DNA of 63,892 bases, filler included, from Octopus bimaculoides (Eukaryota), in assembly GCF_001194135.2 (NCBI RefSeq). It is 12 parts of 11 records of this genome, joined end to end, with 100 filler letters (N's around TTAATTAATTAA, not from the genome) between each part and the next. Parts side by side here need not be neighbours in the genome. Positions count along the whole stretch, not along the records: positions 22,571 to 32,995 come from NC_068991.1; 11 more parts are not named here. One strand, 5' to 3'. The notes beneath the pieces were generated by a model. The model saw only the letters and a list, made by a program, of their open reading frames with translations, made no database searches and had not been told where the DNA came from. Positions 11,911-32,239 of this stretch are shown one piece after another. Both the position numbers and the translations under genes were made by a program. Position 1 is the first letter of the stretch; the number at the start of each line of letters is the position of its first letter.

Positions 11911-12339
11911 CGTATTCTGGACATTGTCCGGACTGCGCCGATTGTATTTTGTTTAGAAACACCTCTTGTTTTGCAGGAGGTGTGCATAAAGAAATATTGA
12001 TTTGTAACAACTTGCGAAAAAAGCAAATGTTTTGCCACTTTTGTTATTTATTTAAAGATGGCTGATAAAGAAGTCATCATAATGTTCCACAACGACGCGT
12101 TTTTGTCGGAGAAAAGACAGAATGAAGGCGGGGCGTGGAACACACATGATGACGTCGCCGAGGCGAAAACAGTTTCGTCTTTAAGCAACGTCAAGAGATT
12201 AGGTGATTATGACGACAACAGCAGCAGCAGCAGCAGCACTAGCAGAAGTGGCAAATAACAACAACAACAACGATACTAACGATAGGAAACTTAGAAACGT
12301 CATTAACCTCACTGCCACTGCCACTACAACCATTTTCTT

Positions 12340-13133
12340 TATTTAAGCACTCAGATTTTTAAAGAGGCGACAAACCACCTCCGCTTCAGTGGAGGTTTCT
12401 TTTGCGATTGTTACCAGAAGTTTGGAAGATTTCCGCATAGGTGAAGAAGATCTGAAAATGATCAGGAAAATTGTTGAAAGGAATAGGAGAAGAGTAGCCC
12501 TAAACCCTGCATCTGATGTGAACGAGAATCTTATGATGTATGGGGACATACCGCTGCATCGGAGTTAAATCACGCCGGGTGAAAAATGCTTCTGTGAGCC
12601 AAATACCAAAAATGCCTTGGTACGTGTTTGAGCCGTTTGAACAGAAGAGCCACATCACCCGATGAAAGAAATTTGAAACTATTGAGGTGAGATTAAAGAC
12701 CGAAGAAGAAGTCAGGTGTCATTGAGCGACCACTTTGAGGAATGAAAACTGACCCTAACCCTAACCCTACCTATCGCAGTCAACACCTTGCTAAGATTAG
12801 GATATTGAACGTGCCATCAGAAATATCCATCACTTGGTTAGTGGCGGTCATCCTGGCAGGTTTAGAAGGCGATGTGACAATGTTGGAGGTCAAGAAAATA
12901 CCTAATCAAAACCGGTCGGGAATAAATATGGAACTGACCTTACAATGTCAACAAGCCTATATCGACCAGCTGCCCGATCTAATCCATCTCCCGATTAGTA
13001 CTTCATTTGTCAGTAGAGGATAGAAGACCAAGATGTCACACATGTGGGTTTGCGATGTACTAAAGAAGCCATACTTTGTCACCGCTCCTTCCGCACGGTC
13101 GATTTCAGAACGTTTACTAAGCTGGGAACGTAT
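12340..13133 (+). mobile_element. L1/Tx1-like LINE fragment (ORF1 part joined to a downstream segment)
   Basis: KIRILNVPSEISITWLVAVILAG is homologous to the 6589-6850 ORF1. Confidence 0.55.
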
Positions 13134-13839
13134 NNNNNNNNNNNNNNNNNNNNNNNNNNNNNNNNNNNNNNNNNNNNNNNNNNNNNNNNNNNNNNNNNNN
13201 NNNNNNNNNNNNNNNNNNNNNNNNNNNNNNNNNNNNNNNNNNNNNNNNNNNNNNNNNNNNNNNNNNNNNNNNNNNNNNNNNNNNNNNNNNNNNNNNNNNN
13301 NNNNNNNNNNNNNNNNNNNNNNNNNNNNNNNNNNNNNNNNNNNNNNNNNNNNNNNNNNNNNNNNNNNNNNNNNNNNNNNNNNNNNNNNNNNNNNNNNNNN
13401 NNNNNNNNNNNNNNNNNNNNNNNNNNNNNNNNNNNNNNNNNNNNNNNNNNNNNNNNNNNNNNNNNNNNNNNNNNNNNNNNNNNNNNNNNNNNNNNNNNNN
13501 NNNNNNNNNNNNNNNNNNNNNNNNNNNNNNNNNNNNNNNNNNNNNNNNNNNNNNNNNNNNNNNNNNNNNNNNNNNNNNNNNNNNNNNNNNNNNNNNNNNN
13601 NNNNNNNNNNNNNNNNNNNNNNNNNNNNNNNNNNNNNNNNNNNNNNNNNNNNNNNNNNNNNNNNNNNNNNNNNNNNNNNNNNNNNNNNNNNNNNNNNNNN
13701 NNNNNNNNNNNNNNNNNNNNNNNNNNNNNNNNNNNNNNNNNNNNNNNNNNNNNNNNNNNNNNNNNNNNNNNNNNNNNTTCAGGCCTTCTGCTTAAAGCAG
13801 AAATTAGTACGTCTCCAGCGTTAGAGGCTGTGCAAAGAC

Positions 13840-24904: not shown

Positions 24905-25075
24905 GGTACGAGCATAGTTGTAGAGTTGCCAAGTTCGCTACCACATGGTCCGAGGCCCAATTCATCTGCACGTTGTCTTGAGCAAGTGTCTTCTACCAAT
25001 GCCCCAGGTTAATCAATACTTCATGAGTAAAATATGATAGACGGAAACTGTGCAGAAGTCCATTGTATACGTATA
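24905..25075 (+). mobile_element. Degenerate SINE head (family B/C)
   Basis: cttgagcaagtgtcttcta...gacggaaactg. Confidence 0.6.
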
Positions 25076-26623
25076 GATGGTTAATTATTATCTCGTTTGT
25101 GTATAGCTTTCACCGACATGAATAAACATCGACGAAGGTTGTAAACATCGGTGAAGAATCCGATGTTTACATTATCTTTCGTTGAAAACTTTGCCATTAA
25201 TTTTTACAAACAATCAAAACTTCTTAGCTATTCAGTTATATAAACATTATTACATACAACCATAAAGATTCAGTTATATTTATTATTAGTAAGTTTGGTT
25301 AGTTAGTAGAAGTCCAGGCGAAATGAATTATAAAACTGAATGTGTTGTTTCAGCGAGTTCAGATGCCATTGATAACAAAACATCTTGAACAACGAAGGAA
25401 CCTTTGCATAGTTGCTCTACCTGCTAGAGGTAGCAATCAAATCTCACATCAAGCCCCACTGTCTTATGGAGTAACATTGAATCATACGATGCTAGTTGTT
25501 CTATATCAGTGGTTGTCCACCATTTTTTATCTATAGACTCCTTCGATTACTATTTTATTCTGGTGGACCCCCATAGCCTTTCGATGTTTAAAAACTAGTT
25601 TTATAGATACTTCTTTCAATGTTCCTATTTTGTTTTTCACACACTGTCGGTTGAACTATGTAAAATGCTGGAGAAAGAATCCTAGCCGTTTCTTGTAATA
25701 TATACCAATACATAAATCTAAAGCAACATTTTTTTCAGAGGCCCTTAAAATACTATTGTGGACAATTTGCTATTTTGTTGCGGGGACCCCCCCCCCAAAT
25801 CTTATCTAAGGACCCCAATTGAGAACCACTGCTCTATATAAACGGTGTGGCATGGCTGGAATGATTTTGATCATAGGTTTGCTTCATTAGATACATTTAA
25901 ACAGCTGATCTTATACCGCAGTAAGGAATAACTACAAGTGTAATGACATGGCCATTCAAACAGTCAAGCGATGTTTTTTTGGTTTTTTTTTGTAGGGGGT
26001 TGGGTAATCAGGACGAAAAATGGTTTCTTTTGCTGATCATTTTCCCTGCCATTTGCAAGTTATTGACATCGCAGCTATTACAACGTAAAGCTAAATGATA
26101 TCTAAGCAATACAGAGCAGTAGGTAGTTGAATAGTTAGAATATTTGCTTTTCGTTGAAAAGACGCAAACACTCGGTACCAGTCTGCTTGGTTGTAAATTA
26201 GCTGTCACATCATCAATGATTAGAGGTAATAAAGTATAACTGACTACCGTTTCCTTTGAGCAAAATCTCTGATTGCCAGCCTGTTCAAAAAAAGGGAGTT
26301 ATCTTAACCACTTAATGGGTTAAGTATTAAAACTTGTATTTCGCCATGGAATTGTTGTGGAACAAATAAAAGTGGATTAATTATAGGAAGAGAGATTTAG
26401 AAATTTATGAGAATCAATTGTTTTTCTGGATGTTAAAGCAAATTCTGCTTAGTGACTATTTCTTGTACCAATTATTTTAATCCAATGGAGTTAAATAGCC
26501 ATTTACTTATTGGACTTGTGCATTTGGTTTTTAGACAACTCTTAAAAGTAAGTTTAAAATGTAGAAATCATTTAATTAAACAGGTTTCTCTTTTTGTTTC
26601 ATTCCAGGAATAACTTTGTGAAT

Positions 26624-26840: not shown

Positions 26841-27569
26841 GTATGGCATTTCTGATTTGTGTTATTTCGGTCTTTAGAGTTAATGGTGTTTTGTGCTATT
26901 CATCAATAAATTAATCATTCATATCTTTTCATCAATGCATCTAAAACACCGTTATTTGCTGACTCACCAAGTCCATTGTATACATATAGATGGTTAATTA
27001 TTATCTCATTTGTGTATAGCTTTCACCGACATGAATAAACATCAATGAAGGTTGTAAACATCAGTGAAGAATCTGATGTTTACGTTATCTTTCGTTGAAA
27101 CCTTTGCTTCTAAACTTTGCTTAGAAGTAATTGATGAGGTTTTTAACAGTTTGCAGTCATGGCCTCAGATCTTGCTATAAGAATAACTAAGTAAAAGATG
27201 GGCTTTAGTGGAATATAATTTCAATTTATGTTCAGAATTAAGTTATTTATCAAAGCTAGGGTGGTGAATGTTTGCTTATTGATAATGCGAGAGTTCTTTG
27301 GGGTAACAGAGAGATAAATAGTTACCTGAACTTTAATAGAAACCAGATTTTCTGTACATCTGCTTCTACAGATCTTATGTGTATCTCCTACTTCTGAGAG
27401 ATGTTCTGTAAAGTTCATGAAGTATTTTGTTGCTTTTCACAATTTCTATTAAACCTTACATGGAACAATCTCTTCCTGGTTTCCAGAAGTGAAATGACTT
27501 AATGAATATCTTATTGGACTGCTAACATATAAGTCTTGAGATCAAATCTAGTTTTTTTTTTTCTTCTTA

Positions 27570-27778: not shown

Positions 27779-27864
<86 letters not shown>

Positions 27865-27990
27865 GACGGACTTCTTCAGTTTCCGTCTACCAAATCCACT
27901 CACAAGGCCTGAGGCTATAGTAGGAGACATTCACCCAAAGTGCTACACAGTGGGACTGAACCCAGAACCATGTAGTTGGGAATCAAGCTT
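27570..27990 (-). mobile_element. Near full-length SINE family B with internal (TA)n
   Basis: tRNA-like head at about 27990-27930, (TA)n at 27783-27862, and tail gcagtgctccaacatggccacagtcaaatgactgaaac. Confidence 0.85.
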
Positions 27991-28887
27991 CTTACATTCT
28001 ATATCAATTTATATCATCTGAGAGCATTGCTTGAGCAGAGGAAGGCATGCTGTGAAAATGGAAATACCTGTTCATAATTTGAAGGGCTGAGCCATTGATA
28101 GTTTGATTGGTTGGTCAGGAAAACAGTACTGCACCAGTTTCACTTGACTACAATACTGAAATAGCTGAGTGGATATGATATAGGAATTCCAATTCAATAA
28201 TTTTGAGTTCAAATTTGTTATAGACGTTTTGTAGTGTATTTGGACAATGTTCACAGTTCTACTTTGCCTCAGTTAATCTAACTGTTGGAAACAGGCACCA
28301 CATCATCTTGGAATAATACCTTCAGTTGACAAGTGTTTTATCCAGTGGAAGATATACCTACCTGCTTCATACACTAAAACTGGAGTAGGGAGACATTTAC
28401 ATTTTTTTAATGACTTGGGAAGCTGCATCTCACATGAAATATGAGTAATGGATCTTTTTACATTTACTAAGCAAATAGATTAAGAAGCCTGTATGGCTGA
28501 ACTTCATTGCAGTTTTTATATCATTAAAAAACATTAAATGGTAGAAATACAAATACCAATTCGTTGGAATAGAGAATGTCTTTGTAATACAACAGAATAA
28601 ACTGTAAAATCCAGTGATATTTACCTGTACAGTTCTAGTGAAATACCTGCAGCTGATATGAACTCATGAGAAGAAAATAGTTAGGATAGATCTGAGATTA
28701 TTAGTAATTATTGGTTGAAATTAAGATAGATTAAGAGGCATGTAATGTTTGTTTACAAAGATACATGGAAATCTTTGCAGACCTGTCTCATCTTTACTAC
28801 TGTACAGAAAAAAAATGTGAAAATGGTGGAGACAATAATGATTTAATTTTTCTTTTCCATAATTTTTTCTAGAAAAATTGTTTCCAG

Positions 28888-29018
28888 GTCTTTTACCTCA
28901 ACTGTGCAGTTGTCAAGTATGTTCATGTGGGCACAAAAAGAAAGCAGTATCAGTAGTTGAGTGTTTCAAGAGTATGGTCAATAATAATAATAATAACCAT
29001 TATATTTTATGCACACAG
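28888..29018 (+). CDS. UTP23: UTP23 coding exon 2
   Basis: TTCCAG| GLLPQLCSCQVCSCGHKKKAVSVVECFKSMVNNNNNNHYILCTQ |GTTAGT. 131 nt; phase 1 in and phase 0 out, consistent with the flanking exons. Confidence 0.93.
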
Positions 29019-29244
29019 GTTAGTAGTTTTCTATTTTGTTCTGTATATATACATATGTACTCATCTGTATTTGCAGCACGTGCACATACACACACACACA
29101 CACCTGTTTATATGTATTTGTGCATGAGTATTTTTAAAATTCTTTTTACTGATTTCATTTAAGGGACTTTGGCCTGCTGGGCACTGCCTTTAAAGATTTA
29201 GTCAACCTTATCAACTCTATTTGTTGAATTGCTAGGTTATGAGA

Positions 29245-29585
29245 TATAGTTCCAAGATACATCTCACAGATACTCTGGGATGCATCATCAGTGATGTTTC
29301 TGGAGCTGCAAGGGGCTTTTAAGTCTTTTAACACCCTTTCACCCAGTTGACCCAGCCTGGGTTAATCAAATCTCAGCTTGCATCCTAGTAGCAGTAAACC
29401 TCTCATCTACCTTCTTTATCTAAAGACATCATGTGACTTCCTCTGCAGCTTCATTAATGAAACTTATAGATCTCCTCTTATAATTCCAAACCCAGTCAGA
29501 ACTTTGTAGAATAAATGCCCTGCTAAATCCAGGTAGCTCATTTCAGTTGCCTTGTTACATGCCTGCTAGCTCTGGTTTCTGCACT
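29245..29585 (-). mobile_element. 3' end fragment of a HERO-like non-LTR element in UTP23 intron 3
   Basis: Degenerate NEAAEE..CL*IKK C-terminus and a ccagaaacatcactgatgatg 3' UTR motif, similar to 20040-20230. Confidence 0.55.
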
Positions 29586-30271
29586 GCTTTAACACTTTCG
29601 TTACTGTATTTATTTTGAGATGCTCTGTGTTTCTTTCAATTACTTTAAATATAACAATGAATTTAGTAAAATAACTTAGTTATCATTCAGCTAGTATTAG
29701 GAACATAAATACTGCTAAGATTCCTTGGTAAGCTTTAGTAAAACTTCACCAACCTGAACTACACTTAGTAACAGAAATTTAGTCACAAATTTTTGTAGGT
29801 AACATAACAAGTTTCAAGTTATCTTTCATGAATGTTACATGTCTCAGAACTGTTCTCTATTAAACAGAGCAAGATTAATAACTAAGAAGAGGTTAATATT
29901 TTAGAAATGTATGTTTGCACAAGTAAATAGAATCAGTGATGTAATGACTAACTGTTAATTAGAGCAATTCCAGATTCCTTTTACATCTGTTTCTTGTAAA
30001 CTTACTTTTCTAATTTAGTATTTGGAATATTTGGTTTGCTAGCAGCATAACTTCTCACTCTTTATTCTAATCTTTCATGCTGAAAAAATTTTACTCGTTA
30101 GGTATGCTTTACTTCATAAACATTATCACTTTAACAATAAACCTCTGAGCGAGGTATAAACAGAGATTTATTATTGCTTATTTCTACTTTTTCGAGATCA
30201 ATGACTTTTCGTCACTGGAAAAAGTATATATTTGCATTGAGAACCAGTTCCCATCACCAACCGGTGGTTGT

Positions 30272-30316
30272 CACATGCTGATGACGGGTCAGTACCCAGA
30301 AACTCAGGTCCATGTG
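30272..30316 (+). ncRNA. Type I hammerhead ribozyme (near-intact), intronic and sense to UTP23
   Basis: CACATG / CTGATGA / c-GGGT-cagt-ACCC-a / GAAA / c-tcag-g / TC / CATGTG: perfect 6-bp stem I, canonical core, GUC cleavage triplet, C-A mismatch at the base of stem II. Confidence 0.8.
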
Positions 30317-31861
30317 TATCACGTCAAGCTGGAGATGGGAAAGATAACTTCCCTTTGCAAGTACTGATAGGGCACAGTGTCAATAGTCAGCTGGAGGAGA
30401 TGTCTTCCTGGGGCTACAGTAGCATCAACCCTTAAGGGTTAGCCACATTTAGGTGGCAAATATATTTCACGATATTATCACTTTAGTTACTTTGAAGCTG
30501 ACATCATATGAAGTTGTGCTTTCAAACTTTGGTAGCTTGTGAAGCAGTGAGAAACAAAAGTTCTTATATGAAGGTGAAATGGACAGGTTAATTTAGTAAT
30601 AGTGTGTCATTATAAAAATTCATTTGGATATTTTTTAACTCCACATTTTAATAACCATTTCTTTTGCACAGTAACTATTGTTACATCTCTTTAGGAATGC
30701 TCTATGTGCTGGTTCATGAAATAAATAAATGTGTTTGAATTTTCAACACTAATATTGTTACACACTTGTATAGTTAAGTCATTGGAATGAAAAACTATAT
30801 GTTTGAAGTGAGACATGTACAATAATGCATTAAAGTTTTTTCAGCATTGTGGAAAAACAAAAAACAAAACAAGTATGTTGCTGAAAATAGTCAAAAAAAA
30901 AAAAGAGAAGCAAAATTAAAATTAACTGGTGTCCCTTTCCCAGCAATTAATAAGAAACTTAAATACATTTCAATTAAAAGAGAGTAATGAATGTTTCACA
31001 TGACTGTAGAATTCCTTTGTAGACACACTTCATTTATCTGGGTTAATATTTTTATAAACAACTTAGTTTGATAAAATAAGTAGCAGGCTTGAAGAATAAG
31101 TAATGGAGATGATATTATTGACTAAATGATTTCAAGGTGGTACCCCAGCATGACCGCAGTCTAACACAATTTGGAAACTTAATTCTATAGATAGCGATTG
31201 TTTTTTGCATTATGTAATATGGTTAAAAATAATTTACTTTTTGTTTTGTTTTGTTTTTTTCGCTTTATTACATTTTTTTACAAACACGAAGAAAAACTAT
31301 TTGTTTACATATGGAATTCAAACAGAAGTTGATGCTTAAAACAGAAGCAAATCTTGTAATATTAAGCATTACAATTTATGTTTAATATACAAATAAACTT
31401 TATTGTTTAGAAATTTTTTAATATTCATTTATAATTTCTTCAGAGTAATATGACTTTTTTTTAATAATGTGGGAAAAAAATGATAAACTGGACACAGTCT
31501 TGCACTTCTTCAATCACTATATTATAGATATTAGCTATCAAAGAATTTGTGCCAAGGCACCTGTAACAGTTATACTTTATTGCAGTTGGAATCATTTAGC
31601 CTTGTAGAATGTCTGCAGTTGTTTAGCGTTGAAGTACTTCTTGGTTTTAGAGAGAAAGGTAAGTCTTGGATACAAATTAGGCAGTACTAAAAGAAAATTT
31701 CTCAGATATTCAGTTCTAGTATGCATGTATGGATTGTGAAAAAGATATGTCCTTAAAAAAATAAAGAGAAAAACGGCTTTATGAATTTTCAGACTTAATC
31801 AAGTTTTTCTTAGTAGATAAGATACTTGTAAAGTTTTATTTTTATTAATTTTTTTTCCTAG

Positions 31862-32239
31862 GACAAGAAAATTCAGAAGGTTCTTCGAAAAACTCCTGGT
31901 GTTCCCATCATTTTCATTGATAGAACTGTCTGTATTGAGCAACCAAGCAAAGTTTCTCAGCAAATAGCAACAGATGGTTTTGATGGAGAAGTGGAGGAAT
32001 TAAATTATGAAGACAAAGTATTAAATCAGTTAAAAGAAAGGATTTTGGTTAAAAAACCTCGTGTTGATTTTAAGAAGCAAAAATCAAAGAAGGGAGCTAA
32101 TCCATTGTCATGCAAGAAAAAGAAAGTTGTAAATGTTGTTCCTAGCAAAGACAATGGCATCAAAAAATCTCGCAAAAGAAGAAAAAAATATAAGGTTTCT
32201 TCTCATATTAAAGAACTTTTGAAAAATATTCAGCAATGA
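31862..32239 (+). CDS. UTP23: UTP23 coding exon 3 (to stop)
   Basis: CCTAG| DKKIQKVLRKTPGVPIIFI...GANPLSCKKKK...KSRKRRKK...NIQQ*. The conserved PGVP and NPLSC motifs and basic tail are present; the three exons total 726 nt. Confidence 0.95.
   Translation, partial: DKKIQKVLRKTPGVPIIFIDRTVCIEQPSKVSQQIATDGFDGEVEELNYEDKVLNQLKERILVKKPRVDFKKQKSKKGANPLSCKKKKVVNVVPSKDNGIKKSRKRRKKYKVSSHIKELLKNIQQ

What the first reader, a model, noticed from the sequence alone, without database searches (positions are those of the whole stretch)
30255..30460. Hammerhead ribozyme in a hairpin-rich retrozyme-like element on the sense strand of UTP23 intron 3
Seen: stem I CACATG/CATGTG, extended by GTGGT/ATCAC across an asymmetric internal loop (the kind that docks loop II), core CTGATGA...GAAA, stem II GGGT-cagt-ACCC and a GUC site (cut after 30310). 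Downstream hairpins are GGGAA/TTCCC, the perfect palindrome AACCCTTAAGGGTT (30427-30440) and GCCAC/GTGGC. The only defect is a C-A pair at the stem II base, explainable by CpG decay from C-G. Inference: every UTP23 pre-mRNA would carry a potentially self-cleaving RNA, which could affect splicing or turnover of a ribosome-biogenesis gene.
Basis: partly seen in the sequence, partly recalled or inferred. Interest (0 to 1): 0.75.

Follow-up and report, generated by a model that had tools for sequence, protein, structure and literature searches.

The report
Lone hammerhead ribozyme relic in intron
A genuine hammerhead-ribozyme motif sits on the sense strand of a UTP23 intron, but it is best read as a single, decayed copy of a known ribozyme-carrying mobile element, not as a regulator of the gene.

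Summary
The motif is real and sits at the stated coordinates. It is a type-I hammerhead: 6-bp helix I, a 3x1 internal loop, a 5-bp distal helix, CUGAUGA, a 4-bp helix II, GAAA, a 2-bp helix III and a GUC site cut after 30310. A loose descriptor expects about 0.001 such motifs per 10.4 kb. It is the only hit in the piece. It is also the top hit (15.8 bits, E~0.006) of a model built from four experimentally active animal retrozyme hammerheads. Its periphery matches the axolotl retrozyme ribozymes closely.

No Rfam hammerhead model matches it. It departs from the validated examples in two ways: a C.A mismatch at 10.1/11.1 and a non-palindromic helix III. It lies in a ~240-bp GC-rich, CpG-depleted island with no tandem partner, no second ribozyme and no Penelope-like ORF in the three sense frames. 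The "hairpin-rich" flank folds no better than shuffles.

The host gene is UTP23, on the + strand. The motif lies between coding exons 2 and 3. The orthologous intron of Argonauta hians lacks it.

Best reading: a solitary monomer of a retrozyme/Penelope-related element with weak or no cleavage and little effect on UTP23. It is a new member of a known kind, of low interest.

The parts
30264..30268 (+). Distal helix I, 5' strand (GUGGU)
   Evidence: Pairs with 30318-30322 (4 Watson-Crick pairs and 1 G.U). Pairing probability is 0.65-0.99. Same geometry as the axolotl retrozyme hammerheads.
30269..30271 (+). Internal loop 1, 5' side (UGU)
   Evidence: Forms a 3x1 internal loop with U30317. Axolotl Ax330 has UGC/U and Ax353 has UUC/U.
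30272..30277 (+). Helix I, 5' strand (CACAUG)
   Evidence: Six Watson-Crick pairs with 30311-30316. Pairing probability is 0.85-0.99, including in a +/-200 nt context.
30278..30284 (+). Catalytic core box C3-A9 (CUGAUGA)
   Evidence: Read directly. Matched to the model consensus.
30285..30298 (+). Helix II hairpin. C30285.A30298 occupy positions 10.1/11.1 (mismatch). GGGU 30286-30289 pairs with ACCC 30294-30297, loop CAGU.
   Evidence: Pairing probability is 0.77-0.98. The mismatch sits at what PMC3088659 calls the most conserved pair after A15.1-U16.1.
30299..30302 (+). Core box G12 A13 A14 A15.1 (GAAA)
30302..30309 (+). Helix III: A30302-U30309 and C30303-G30308, with tetraloop UCAG. The inner sequence CUCAGG is not palindromic.
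   Evidence: The shape (2 bp plus a tetraloop) is what PMC7229834 calls typical of invertebrate hammerheads and of HHR_Amex2.
30310..30310 (+). C17. The predicted scissile bond is 3' of this base (GUC site 30308-30310).
   Evidence: Follows from the hammerhead numbering. Cleavage was not tested.
30311..30322 (+). Helix I 3' strand (CAUGUG 30311-30316), unpaired U1.7 (30317), distal helix 3' strand (AUCAC 30318-30322)
30220..30460 (+). GC-rich, CpG-depleted island that carries the ribozyme. This is the probable body of the inserted element, and its borders are approximate.
   Evidence: GC is 0.45-0.51 against 0.25-0.31 in the flanks. CpG o/e is 0.22 and CpA o/e is 1.72. No Rfam family matches it.
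30226..30233 (.). Candidate target-site duplication ATATATTT (second copy at 30460-30467). Weak evidence.
   Evidence: Read. An 8-mer repeat in AT-rich DNA is not significant on its own.
30122..30133 (.). Alternative candidate target-site duplication ATTATCACTTTA (second copy at 30474-30485), which would bound a 340-bp element. Weak evidence.
   Evidence: family D12. Another perfect 12-mer pair occurs in the same 2 kb, so chance is not excluded.
28873..29018 (+). UTP23 coding exon 2, upstream of the host intron (donor GTTAGT at 29019)
   Evidence: The Argonauta gene has the same exon structure.
31862..32239 (+). UTP23 coding exon 3, downstream of the host intron (acceptor ...TTTTCCTAG at 31861)

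Best explanation
The sequence 30264-30322 is a genuine canonical type-I hammerhead ribozyme of the kind carried by animal non-LTR retrozymes and related Penelope-like-element derivatives.

It arrived as part of a ~230-340-bp retroelement copy that inserted, in sense orientation, into the intron between UTP23 coding exons 2 and 3. The copy is now a solitary, CpG-decayed monomer.

Shown:
- The motif and its canonical periphery.
- Its position on the sense strand of the intron.
- The compositional island around it.
- The lack of any tandem partner or second ribozyme.
- Its absence from the Argonauta ortholog.

Inferred:
- The retroelement origin.
- That helices I and II form on the transcribed intron.
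- That catalysis is weak or nil. The 10.1/11.1 pair is a C.A mismatch. Helix III is only 2 bp. Its sequence cannot form the extended dimeric helix III that such ribozymes use in tandem repeats.
- That any slow cleavage happens mostly after the downstream exon is transcribed and splicing is committed, so UTP23 output is essentially unaffected.
For: - Motif at the stated coordinates.
- Chance expectation about 0.001 per 10.4 kb, and the only hit in the piece.
- Top, full-length hit (15.8 bits, rough E 0.006) of a covariance model built only from four experimentally active retrozyme hammerheads.
- Periphery matches the axolotl retrozyme ribozymes feature for feature: 6-bp helix I, 3x1 internal loop with U1.7, 5-bp distal helix, 6-nt loop 2 in the 10.1-10.4 helix II register (its end bases U30289 and A30294 can also pair, giving the CAGU loop).
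- Helices I and II have pairing probability 0.77-0.99, including in a +/-200 nt context.
- GC island with CpG o/e 0.22.
- No second copy or tandem unit.
- No Pfam domain in the sense-strand frames of the intron.
- Same gene structure in Argonauta hians, but no CUGANGA box, no model hit and no similarity to the island in the orthologous intron.

Literature:
- Metazoan type-I hammerheads have a 6-bp helix I, a 4-bp helix II and a 1-2-bp helix III with a palindromic loop, and they act as dimers (PMC4209133).
- Natural, expressed HHR_Amex2 has a U.U mismatch at the helix II base and cleaves 22% per hour as a monomer (PMC7229834).
- Dispersed monomers are common, and about 43% of Xenopus retrozyme copies overlap introns (bioRxiv 10.64898/2026.07.22.740005).
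- Slow intronic ribozymes do not affect splicing (Fong 2009, via PMC10919898).
Against: - No Rfam hammerhead model matches, even at E<=10 on 281 nt. Rfam also missed the clear minimal hammerheads in metagenome loci L005 and L006.
- No other copy of the element could be found, so "repeat family" is an inference. A translated probe and a degenerate DNA pattern found no relatives, and the collections hold almost no cephalopod DNA.
- Target-site duplications are ambiguous.
- Activity was not measured.
- Nearest-neighbour folding cannot judge activity. Validated ribozymes also show the hammerhead fold 3.1-11.8 kcal/mol above the MFE, against 4.7 here.
- A mussel monomer with a similar 2-bp helix III reaches about 0.1 min^-1 (PMC7229834), so appreciable activity is not excluded.
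Confidence: 0.72

Rival explanations
1. It is an active intronic ribozyme. The motif self-cleaves fast enough on nascent UTP23 pre-mRNA to lower splicing efficiency or mark the intron for decay. That would tune a ribosome-biogenesis gene, by analogy with the CPEB3 ribozyme or the amniote intronic hammerheads.
For: - Sense orientation in the intron, a complete catalytic core and canonical tertiary-contact geometry.
- Helices I and II are predicted to form in context.
- Natural hammerheads with a mismatch at 10.1/11.1 are active (U.U in PMC3088659 and PMC7229834).
- An independent metagenome hammerhead has the same C.A.
- Precedents exist for intronic ribozymes that influence the host mRNA (PMC10919898, PMC6155905).
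Against: - U.U was reported as the best-tolerated mismatch, so C.A is expected to be worse (PMC3088659).
- Helix III is 2 bp and non-palindromic, with no partner copy.
- Only about 0.4-1.5 min elapse before the 3' splice site, 1552 nt downstream, is made. This assumes a Pol II rate of 1-4 kb/min, from general knowledge.
- The motif is absent from the Argonauta ortholog.
- Heavy CpG decay of the island suggests no constraint.
Confidence: 0.12
2. It is a fragment of a Penelope-like element pseudo-LTR, not a retrozyme monomer. In that case the autonomous element's terminal repeat was left behind after truncation.
For: - Penelope-like elements carry hammerheads in their terminal repeats, and most genomic copies are single, truncated motifs (PMC4209133).
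- Retrozymes are themselves derived from these repeats (bioRxiv 10.64898/2026.07.22.740005).
Against: - Penelope-type minimal hammerheads have a long helix II (6-8 bp), a short helix I (4-5 bp), little or no helix III and no loop-loop architecture (PMC4209133). This motif has the canonical retrozyme-type architecture.
- The bulge reading leaves an unexplained extra A30298.
- No RT or GIY-YIG remnant appears in the sense-strand frames of the intron.
Confidence: 0.12
3. It is a chance resemblance. The motif arose by accident in intronic DNA and has no ribozyme ancestry.
For: - No Rfam hit.
- The custom model gives only 15.8 bits.
- A loose descriptor would give a few hundred chance hits in a genome of several Gb. 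This extrapolates from 1 hit per 20 Mb.
- The scan looked at many windows.
Against: - The features not demanded by the descriptor are all present and canonical: U7, the 3x1 internal loop with U1.7, a 5-bp distal helix (about 0.007 at a fixed register), a 6-nt loop 2, and a 2-bp helix III with a tetraloop.
- The motif sits inside a discrete GC-rich island unlike the surrounding intron.
Confidence: 0.04

Closest known systems
Axolotl non-LTR retrozyme hammerheads HHR_Amex2 (Rtz353) and HHR_Amex1 (Rtz331) (PMC7229834)
   Same: - Type-I topology, 6-bp helix I and a 3x1 internal loop (UUC/U and UGC/U against UGU/U here).
- A 5-6-bp distal helix and a 5-6-nt loop 2.
- Like Amex2, a 2-bp helix III with a tetraloop and a mismatch at the base of helix II.
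   Different: - The mismatch is C.A, not U.U.
- The helix III inner sequence is not palindromic (CUCAGG against CACGUG and CAUG).
- The axolotl units are 330-350-bp tandem repeats in tens of thousands of copies. Here there is one copy and no tandem.
- There is no sequence similarity outside the ribozyme.
Mussel (Mytilus galloprovincialis) retrozyme hammerhead (PMC7229834)
   Same: - A mollusc type-I hammerhead with a 6-bp helix I and a 2-bp helix III plus tetraloop as a monomer.
- It sits in a non-coding unit of a few hundred bp and is active as a single genomic repeat at about 0.1 min^-1.
   Different: - The mussel motif has the canonical G10.1-C11.1 pair and a palindromic helix III (CGCGCG).
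- Its units are 350-390-bp tandem repeats in about 5000 copies, expressed as circular RNA.
- None of this could be tested here.
Minimal hammerheads of Penelope-like elements (PMC4209133)
   Same: - Widespread, mostly solitary hammerhead motifs scattered in metazoan genomes.
- An extra or unpaired nucleotide at the 5' base of helix II.
- Low activity as monomers.
   Different: Those have a longer helix II, a shorter helix I, no loop-loop architecture, a highly conserved G10.1-C11.1 pair and palindromic 15.2-16.2 positions. This motif has the canonical architecture and meets neither of the last two.
Conserved intronic hammerheads of amniotes (RECK, CTCL/C10orf118, DTNB; Rfam HH9/HH10) and the intronic CPEB3 HDV-like ribozyme (PMC6155905, PMC10919898)
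   Same: A self-cleaving-ribozyme motif on the sense strand of an intron of a protein-coding gene, probably derived from a retroelement.
   Different: Those are conserved across orders or classes and have measured activity. For CPEB3 there is a measured effect on the host mRNA. Here the one available ortholog, Argonauta hians, lacks the motif, and the Rfam models do not match.
Metagenome hammerhead in locus L005 (ENA assembly ERZ1740055, contig NODE-19508)
   Same: - Identical core and helix II base: CUGAUGA-C-GGGU...ACCC-A-GAAAC, that is the same C.A at 10.1/11.1.
- Helix III begins with the same CUC.
   Different: - Most of the shared bases were forced by the search pattern.
- Helix I is 5 bp with no distal helix.
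- Helix III is palindromic (CUCGAG).
- There is no similarity outside the 28-nt core.
- The source organism is unknown.

Membership tests
Hammerhead ribozyme, type I | Conserved core: C3 U4 G5 A6 N7 G8 A9, G12 A13 A14, and cleavage triplet N-U-H | tested here: met
   CUGAUGA 30278-30284, GAA 30299-30301, GUC 30308-30310.
Hammerhead ribozyme, type I | Three helices around the core in type-I order: open helix I, capped helices II and III, and an A15.1-U16.1 pair | tested here: met
   Helix I is 6 bp, helix II is 4 bp plus a tetraloop, and helix III is A30302-U30309 plus C30303-G30308.
Hammerhead ribozyme, type I | G10.1-C11.1 base pair closing helix II, the most conserved pair after A15.1-U16.1 (PMC3088659, PMC4209133) | tested here: not met
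   C30285 lies opposite A30298. Natural active exceptions with U.U exist (PMC3088659, PMC7229834). C.A was seen once more, in L005.
Hammerhead ribozyme, type I | Peripheral loop 1 / loop 2 architecture of canonical metazoan type-I motifs: 6-bp helix I, then an internal loop with an unpaired U1.7, and a 4-position helix II with a 5-6-nt loop | tested here: met
   Structural comparison with the coral and axolotl constructs. The tertiary contacts themselves cannot be tested.
Hammerhead ribozyme, type I | Match to the curated covariance models (Rfam Hammerhead_1 and the other hammerhead models) | tested here: not met
   No hammerhead family was listed at E<=10 on the 10.4-kb piece or on 281 nt. 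The same library also missed the minimal hammerheads in L005 and L006.
Hammerhead ribozyme, type I | Match to a model built from experimentally active retrozyme hammerheads | tested here: met
   Model R1 (4 sequences) gives 30272-30316 as a full-length top hit at 15.8 bits with a rough E of 0.006. The next hits are gapped partial matches. The score is modest.
Hammerhead ribozyme, type I | Site-specific self-cleavage giving 2',3'-cyclic-phosphate and 5'-OH ends | not testable with these tools
   This needs an in-vitro transcription and cleavage assay or end-specific RNA-seq.
Metazoan non-LTR retrozyme | Head-to-tail tandem repeats (at least a dimer) of a 170-400-bp unit, each with a type-I hammerhead | tested here: not met
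   There is one hammerhead in 10.4 kb, and no direct repeat of the unit around it. Solo monomers of such families do exist (bioRxiv 10.64898/2026.07.22.740005).
Metazoan non-LTR retrozyme | Palindromic helix III / loop 3 that allows an active dimeric hammerhead | tested here: not met
   The inner sequence CUCAGG is not its own reverse complement. All four validated examples are palindromic.
Metazoan non-LTR retrozyme | Non-coding unit that folds into a highly self-paired (circular) RNA, with low GC (<45%) | tested here: inconclusive
   The 64-aa translation that spans the island's 55-aa ORF found no homologue. Fold z is -1.0 to -1.6 for the island. It is -2.3 to -2.5 for the 340-nt version, where the shuffle control is biased by mixed composition. 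About 61-65% of bases are paired. GC is 0.43-0.50.
Metazoan non-LTR retrozyme | Multi-copy family in the genome, expressed as linear and circular RNA | not testable with these tools
   No cephalopod genome or transcriptome can be searched by DNA here. A pattern scan of the metagenome collection gave no relatives beyond the core.
Penelope-like element (pseudo-LTR hammerhead) | Adjacent RT / GIY-YIG ORF, or its remnants, on the same strand | tested here: not met
   Pfam scan of the three sense frames of the 2.8-kb intron gave nothing relevant. The minus strand was not scanned.
Penelope-like element (pseudo-LTR hammerhead) | [quoted passage not shown] | tested here: not met
   Helix II is 4 bp and helix I is 6 bp plus a distal helix. 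Only the extra 5' nucleotide (C30285) could fit, and it is opposed by A30298 (PMC4209133).
Domesticated, conserved intronic ribozyme (as in RECK/CTCL or CPEB3) | Presence at the orthologous intron position in related species | tested here: not met
   Argonauta hians UTP23 (76% protein identity, same three coding exons) was examined. Its intron 11914-13552 of L008 has no CUGANGA box, no R1 hit at E<=1, and a Smith-Waterman score against the island no higher than shuffles. Closer relatives could not be examined.

The most novel reading that the evidence does not exclude
The hammerhead is kept by selection in the source lineage (octopods closer than Argonauta) as a slow, tunable self-cleaving switch in the UTP23 intron. 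It would couple intron integrity to ribosome-biogenesis demand. In this reading the C.A at 10.1/11.1 acts as a pH- or cofactor-sensitive weak point, and is not a decay product.
Probability: 0.04. Interest if true: 0.7.

Novelty: new member of a known kind. Interest (0 to 1): 0.22.

Why it matters
If it is only a solitary retroelement relic, it adds one data point. Canonical type-I hammerheads of the retrozyme kind also occur in an octopod-like cephalopod genome. Sense-strand intronic monomers with a weakened core also persist in an essential gene.

It also shows that Rfam's hammerhead models miss such copies, which matters for annotation.

It would matter much more if close relatives kept the motif at this position, or if it cleaved quickly. 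It would then be an invertebrate counterpart of the amniote intronic hammerheads and the CPEB3 ribozyme. The evidence here points away from that.

Tried and rejected
1. **Rfam scan.** cmscan at E<=10 on the piece and on 281 nt gave no hammerhead hit. I did not treat this as refutation, because the same scan missed the obvious minimal hammerheads in L005 and L006.

2. **Translated probe.** I used the sense-frame translation of the element to fish for other copies called as spurious ORFs. There were no hits. Exact-product look-ups of two window ORFs also found nothing.

3. **UTP23 exon 1 alone as a query.** There were no hits. The full spliced protein worked.

4. **Degenerate pattern scan.**
   - The pattern was CTGATGANGGGTNNNNACCCNGAAAC.
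   - It gave 7 metagenome loci and 0 viral loci.
   - These are unrelated hammerhead-like motifs, and similarity does not extend beyond the core.

5. **"Competing fold inactivates it."**
   - CUGA 30278-30281 pairs with loop III UCAG, and the MFE is 4.7 kcal/mol below the hammerhead fold.
   - I rejected this argument. Four experimentally active retrozyme hammerheads show the same or a larger gap, 3.1-11.8 kcal/mol.

6. **"Hairpin-rich" flank as evidence of a viroid-like rod.** The z-scores are not significant.

7. **Target-site duplications.** There are two candidates, an 8-mer and a 12-mer. Neither is significant in AT-rich DNA.

8. **Penelope-like ORF remnants in the intron.** None were found in the sense frames. 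A first attempt failed on stop codons.

9. **MAFFT alignment of extended hammerheads.** It was too poor to build a second model, so I made a manual structural table instead.
Full report
**1. The observation**

| Element | Sequence and position |
|---|---|
| Distal helix I | GUGGU 30264-30268 / AUCAC 30318-30322 (one G.U) |
| Internal loop 1 | UGU 30269-30271 / U 30317 (3x1) |
| Helix I | CACAUG 30272-30277 / CAUGUG 30311-30316 |
| Core, 5' box | CUGAUGA 30278-30284 |
| Mismatch at 10.1/11.1 | C30285 opposite A30298 |
| Helix II | GGGU 30286-30289 / ACCC 30294-30297, loop CAGU |
| Core, 3' box | GAAA 30299-30302 |
| Helix III | A30302-U30309 and C30303-G30308, tetraloop UCAG |
| Cleavage site | GUC 30308-30310, cut predicted after 30310 |

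This is the type-I arrangement, with helix I open and helices II and III capped.

**2. Is it more than chance?**

- I wrote a permissive type-I descriptor. It requires CUGANGA, helix II of at least 4 bp (a base mismatch or 5' bulge allowed), GAAA, UH and helix I of at least 6 bp, with G.U pairs allowed.
- It finds exactly one hit in the 10.4-kb piece on either strand, and that hit is this motif.
- In 20 Mb of first-order Markov sequence with the piece's composition it finds one hit. That is about 0.001 expected per 10.4 kb on both strands.
- Such a descriptor would still give a few hundred accidental hits in a genome of several Gb. The features it did not ask for therefore matter.
- Those features are U at position 7, a 5-bp distal helix at a fixed 3x1 geometry (about 0.007 by chance), a 6-nt loop 2, and a 2-bp helix III with a tetraloop.
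- The motif also sits in a discrete island of 45-51% GC, in an intron that is otherwise 25-31% GC.

**3. Comparison with curated and validated ribozymes**

- Rfam lists no hammerhead family for this region, even at E<=10 on a 281-nt stretch. That is a failed membership test and is reported as such.
- The same library also failed to list the clear minimal hammerheads in metagenome loci L005 and L006, so its sensitivity for short-helix-III animal motifs is poor.
- I therefore took the four retrozyme constructs shown to self-cleave in Cervera and de la Pena 2020 (coral Amil224, mussel Mg353, axolotl Ax353 and Ax330; PMC7229834, supplementary table 2).
- I aligned their ribozymes, built a covariance model and searched the piece with filters off.
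- The top hit, and the only full-length one, is 30272-30316 on the + strand at 15.8 bits with a rough E of 0.006. The score is modest because a four-sequence model overfits the stem sequences.

A manual structural table is more telling.

| Feature | Axolotl Ax330 / Ax353 | Window motif |
|---|---|---|
| Helix I | 6 bp | 6 bp |
| Internal loop 1 | 3x1: UGC/U, UUC/U | 3x1: UGU/U |
| Distal helix | 5-6 bp | 5 bp |
| Loop 2 | 5-6 nt | 6 nt |

- Ax353 (HHR_Amex2) also has a mismatch at the base of helix II (U.U).
- So the window motif has the canonical metazoan type-I architecture described in PMC4209133.

**4. Where it departs from those ribozymes**

- *Positions 10.1/11.1 are C.A.*
  - PMC3088659 calls G10.1-C11.1 the most conserved pair after A15.1-U16.1.
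  - It also notes that U.U supports more activity than any other mispair.
C30297-A30298 is a CpA, and the island has CpG o/e 0.22 and CpA o/e 1.72.
  - The implied ancestor C-G is not the canonical orientation, however.
  - A degenerate pattern scan of the metagenome collection turned up an unrelated hammerhead (L005) with the same C...A, a 5-bp helix I and a palindromic helix III.
  - The mismatch may therefore be a tolerated variant, not a lesion. One copy cannot decide this.
- *The inner helix III sequence, CUCAGG, is not palindromic.* All four validated ribozymes and L005 are palindromic there. That is what lets tandem copies form an extended, active dimeric helix III (PMC4209133, PMC7229834).
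- *There is no partner.* The piece holds no second hammerhead, no tandem unit and no direct repeat of the region.

**5. An argument I dropped**

- RNAfold puts the hammerhead secondary structure 4.7 kcal/mol above an alternative in which CUGA of the core pairs with loop III UCAG.
- The four active ribozymes show the same behaviour, with gaps of 3.1-11.8 kcal/mol.
- Nearest-neighbour folding therefore says nothing about activity.
- What it does show is that helices I and II form with probability 0.77-0.99, even with 200 nt of flank on each side.

**6. The surroundings**

- The "hairpin-rich" flank is not special.
  - Region 30240-30470 folds with z = -0.47.
  - The island folds with z = -1.0 to -1.6, linear or circular.
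  - The 5-bp hairpins and the 14-nt palindrome are within chance.
- No Rfam family, tRNA-like head or protein domain is present.
- Two possible target-site duplications flank the island. They are ATATATTT at 30226 and 30460, and ATTATCACTTTA at 30122 and 30474. Neither is significant in AT-rich DNA.
- The element is thus a ~230-340-bp non-coding insert with one ribozyme.

**7. The host gene**

Their splice sites are GT-AG: donors GTATGG and GTTAGT, with acceptors ending in AG after pyrimidine-rich tracts.
- The spliced 246-aa product hits Pfam Fcf1 at 2e-24 and PDB chains named rRNA-processing protein UTP23 at 6e-25.
- The best database relative is UTP23 of Argonauta hians at 76% identity, so an octopod-like cephalopod source is credible.
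- The ribozyme is on the gene's strand, in the 2843-nt intron 29019-31861. It lies 1292 nt from the 5' splice site and 1552 nt upstream of the next exon.
- "Intron 3" is right only if there is an extra 5' exon. The Argonauta gene model starts 975 nt upstream of the ATG exon and encodes 272 aa, which hints at one.

**8. The orthologous intron**

- The Argonauta locus (L008) has the same three coding exons.
- Its corresponding intron (11914-13552, 1639 nt) has no CUGANGA box, no descriptor hit and no R1 hit at E<=1. Its best local alignment with the island is no better than shuffles.
- Introns are not alignable at this distance, so insertion and loss cannot be told apart.
- The motif is nevertheless not deeply conserved, unlike the amniote intronic hammerheads (PMC6155905). 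Closer relatives were not available.

**9. How it most likely works**

- Shown: a canonical type-I hammerhead motif, on the sense strand of an intron, solitary, in a decayed GC island, and absent in Argonauta.
- Inferred, origin: it is a monomeric copy of a retrozyme or Penelope-derived element.
  - Such monomers are spread evenly along Xenopus chromosomes.
  - About 43% of Xenopus retrozyme copies overlap introns (bioRxiv 10.64898/2026.07.22.740005).
- Inferred, activity: likely low.
  - Known monomer rates for this helix III class are about 0.1 min^-1 (mussel), and 22% and 6% per hour (axolotl).
  - This copy adds a C.A mismatch on top of that.
- Inferred, effect on the host: small.
  - At 1-4 kb/min (general knowledge), the polymerase reaches the next exon in about 0.4-1.5 min.
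  - Even a mussel-like rate would cut only a small minority of transcripts before the 3' splice site exists.
  - Slow intronic ribozymes leave splicing and protein output unchanged, whereas fast ones abort it (Fong et al. 2009, as summarised in PMC10919898).
- The expected effect on UTP23 is therefore negligible.

**10. Verdict**

- This is a new member of a known kind, a canonical metazoan type-I hammerhead in a retroelement-derived intronic insert.
- It fails the tandem-repeat and palindromic-helix-III features of an intact retrozyme, and the G10.1-C11.1 feature of the ribozyme consensus.
- Interest is low unless genome-wide copies, close-relative introns or a cleavage assay say otherwise.

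Noticed in passing
window 25056-25205 and 26969-27118: A 150-nt direct repeat (91% identical) lies upstream of UTP23 exon 1 and again in intron 1. Each copy holds a hairpin that gives a weak mir-30-like Rfam hit (25134-25179 and 27047-27092). It is probably an interspersed repeat (MITE- or SINE-like).
   Followed up: no
window 27783-27863 and about 29038-29133: A perfect (TA)n microsatellite of about 80 nt sits in intron 1. A TG/TA-rich microsatellite sits just after the exon 2 donor. Both produce spurious Rfam hits (mir-297, Pestivirus 3'UTR, RUF3).
   Followed up: no
window 28873-29018 (UTP23 exon 2): The encoded protein has a run of six asparagines (MVNNNNNNHY). Argonauta hians has MVDNRNKCHY at the same place, so this is a lineage-specific poly-N expansion in a conserved PIN-like protein.
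   Followed up: partly
L005 578-620 (+), ENA metagenome assembly ERZ1740055: A type-I hammerhead-like motif with the same C.A at 10.1/11.1 as the window motif, a 5-bp helix I and a palindromic helix III (CUCGAG). Rfam does not list it, but model R1 gives 21 bits. A tRNA gene lies at 15-87 of the same contig.
   Followed up: partly
L007 3903-3945(-), 9357-9400(-), 10936-10975(+), 12609-12651(+); also L002 and L006: JGI metagenome contigs from an unknown eukaryote-like source, with no ORF of 150 aa or more in L007 (the only one checked). L007 carries up to four minimal, Penelope-type hammerhead-like matches to model R1 (14-19 bits); the descriptor confirmed three, two of them with the palindromic ACAUGU. 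In L006, the one at 1649-1691 lies next to a 114-nt near-perfect hairpin (L006 1706-1819, scored as MIR7526 at E=1e-11).
   Followed up: no
L008 10001-10975 (Argonauta hians): The annotated Argonauta UTP23 gene range starts 975 nt upstream of the ATG exon and its product is 272 aa (partial), which implies an extra 5' exon.
   Followed up: no
window 27865-27953 versus L008 21828-21927 (opposite strand): A 100-nt stretch next to the (TA)n repeat is 72% identical to a stretch inside the Argonauta NFACT-family gene range downstream of UTP23. It is probably a repeat shared between the two octopod genomes.
   Followed up: no
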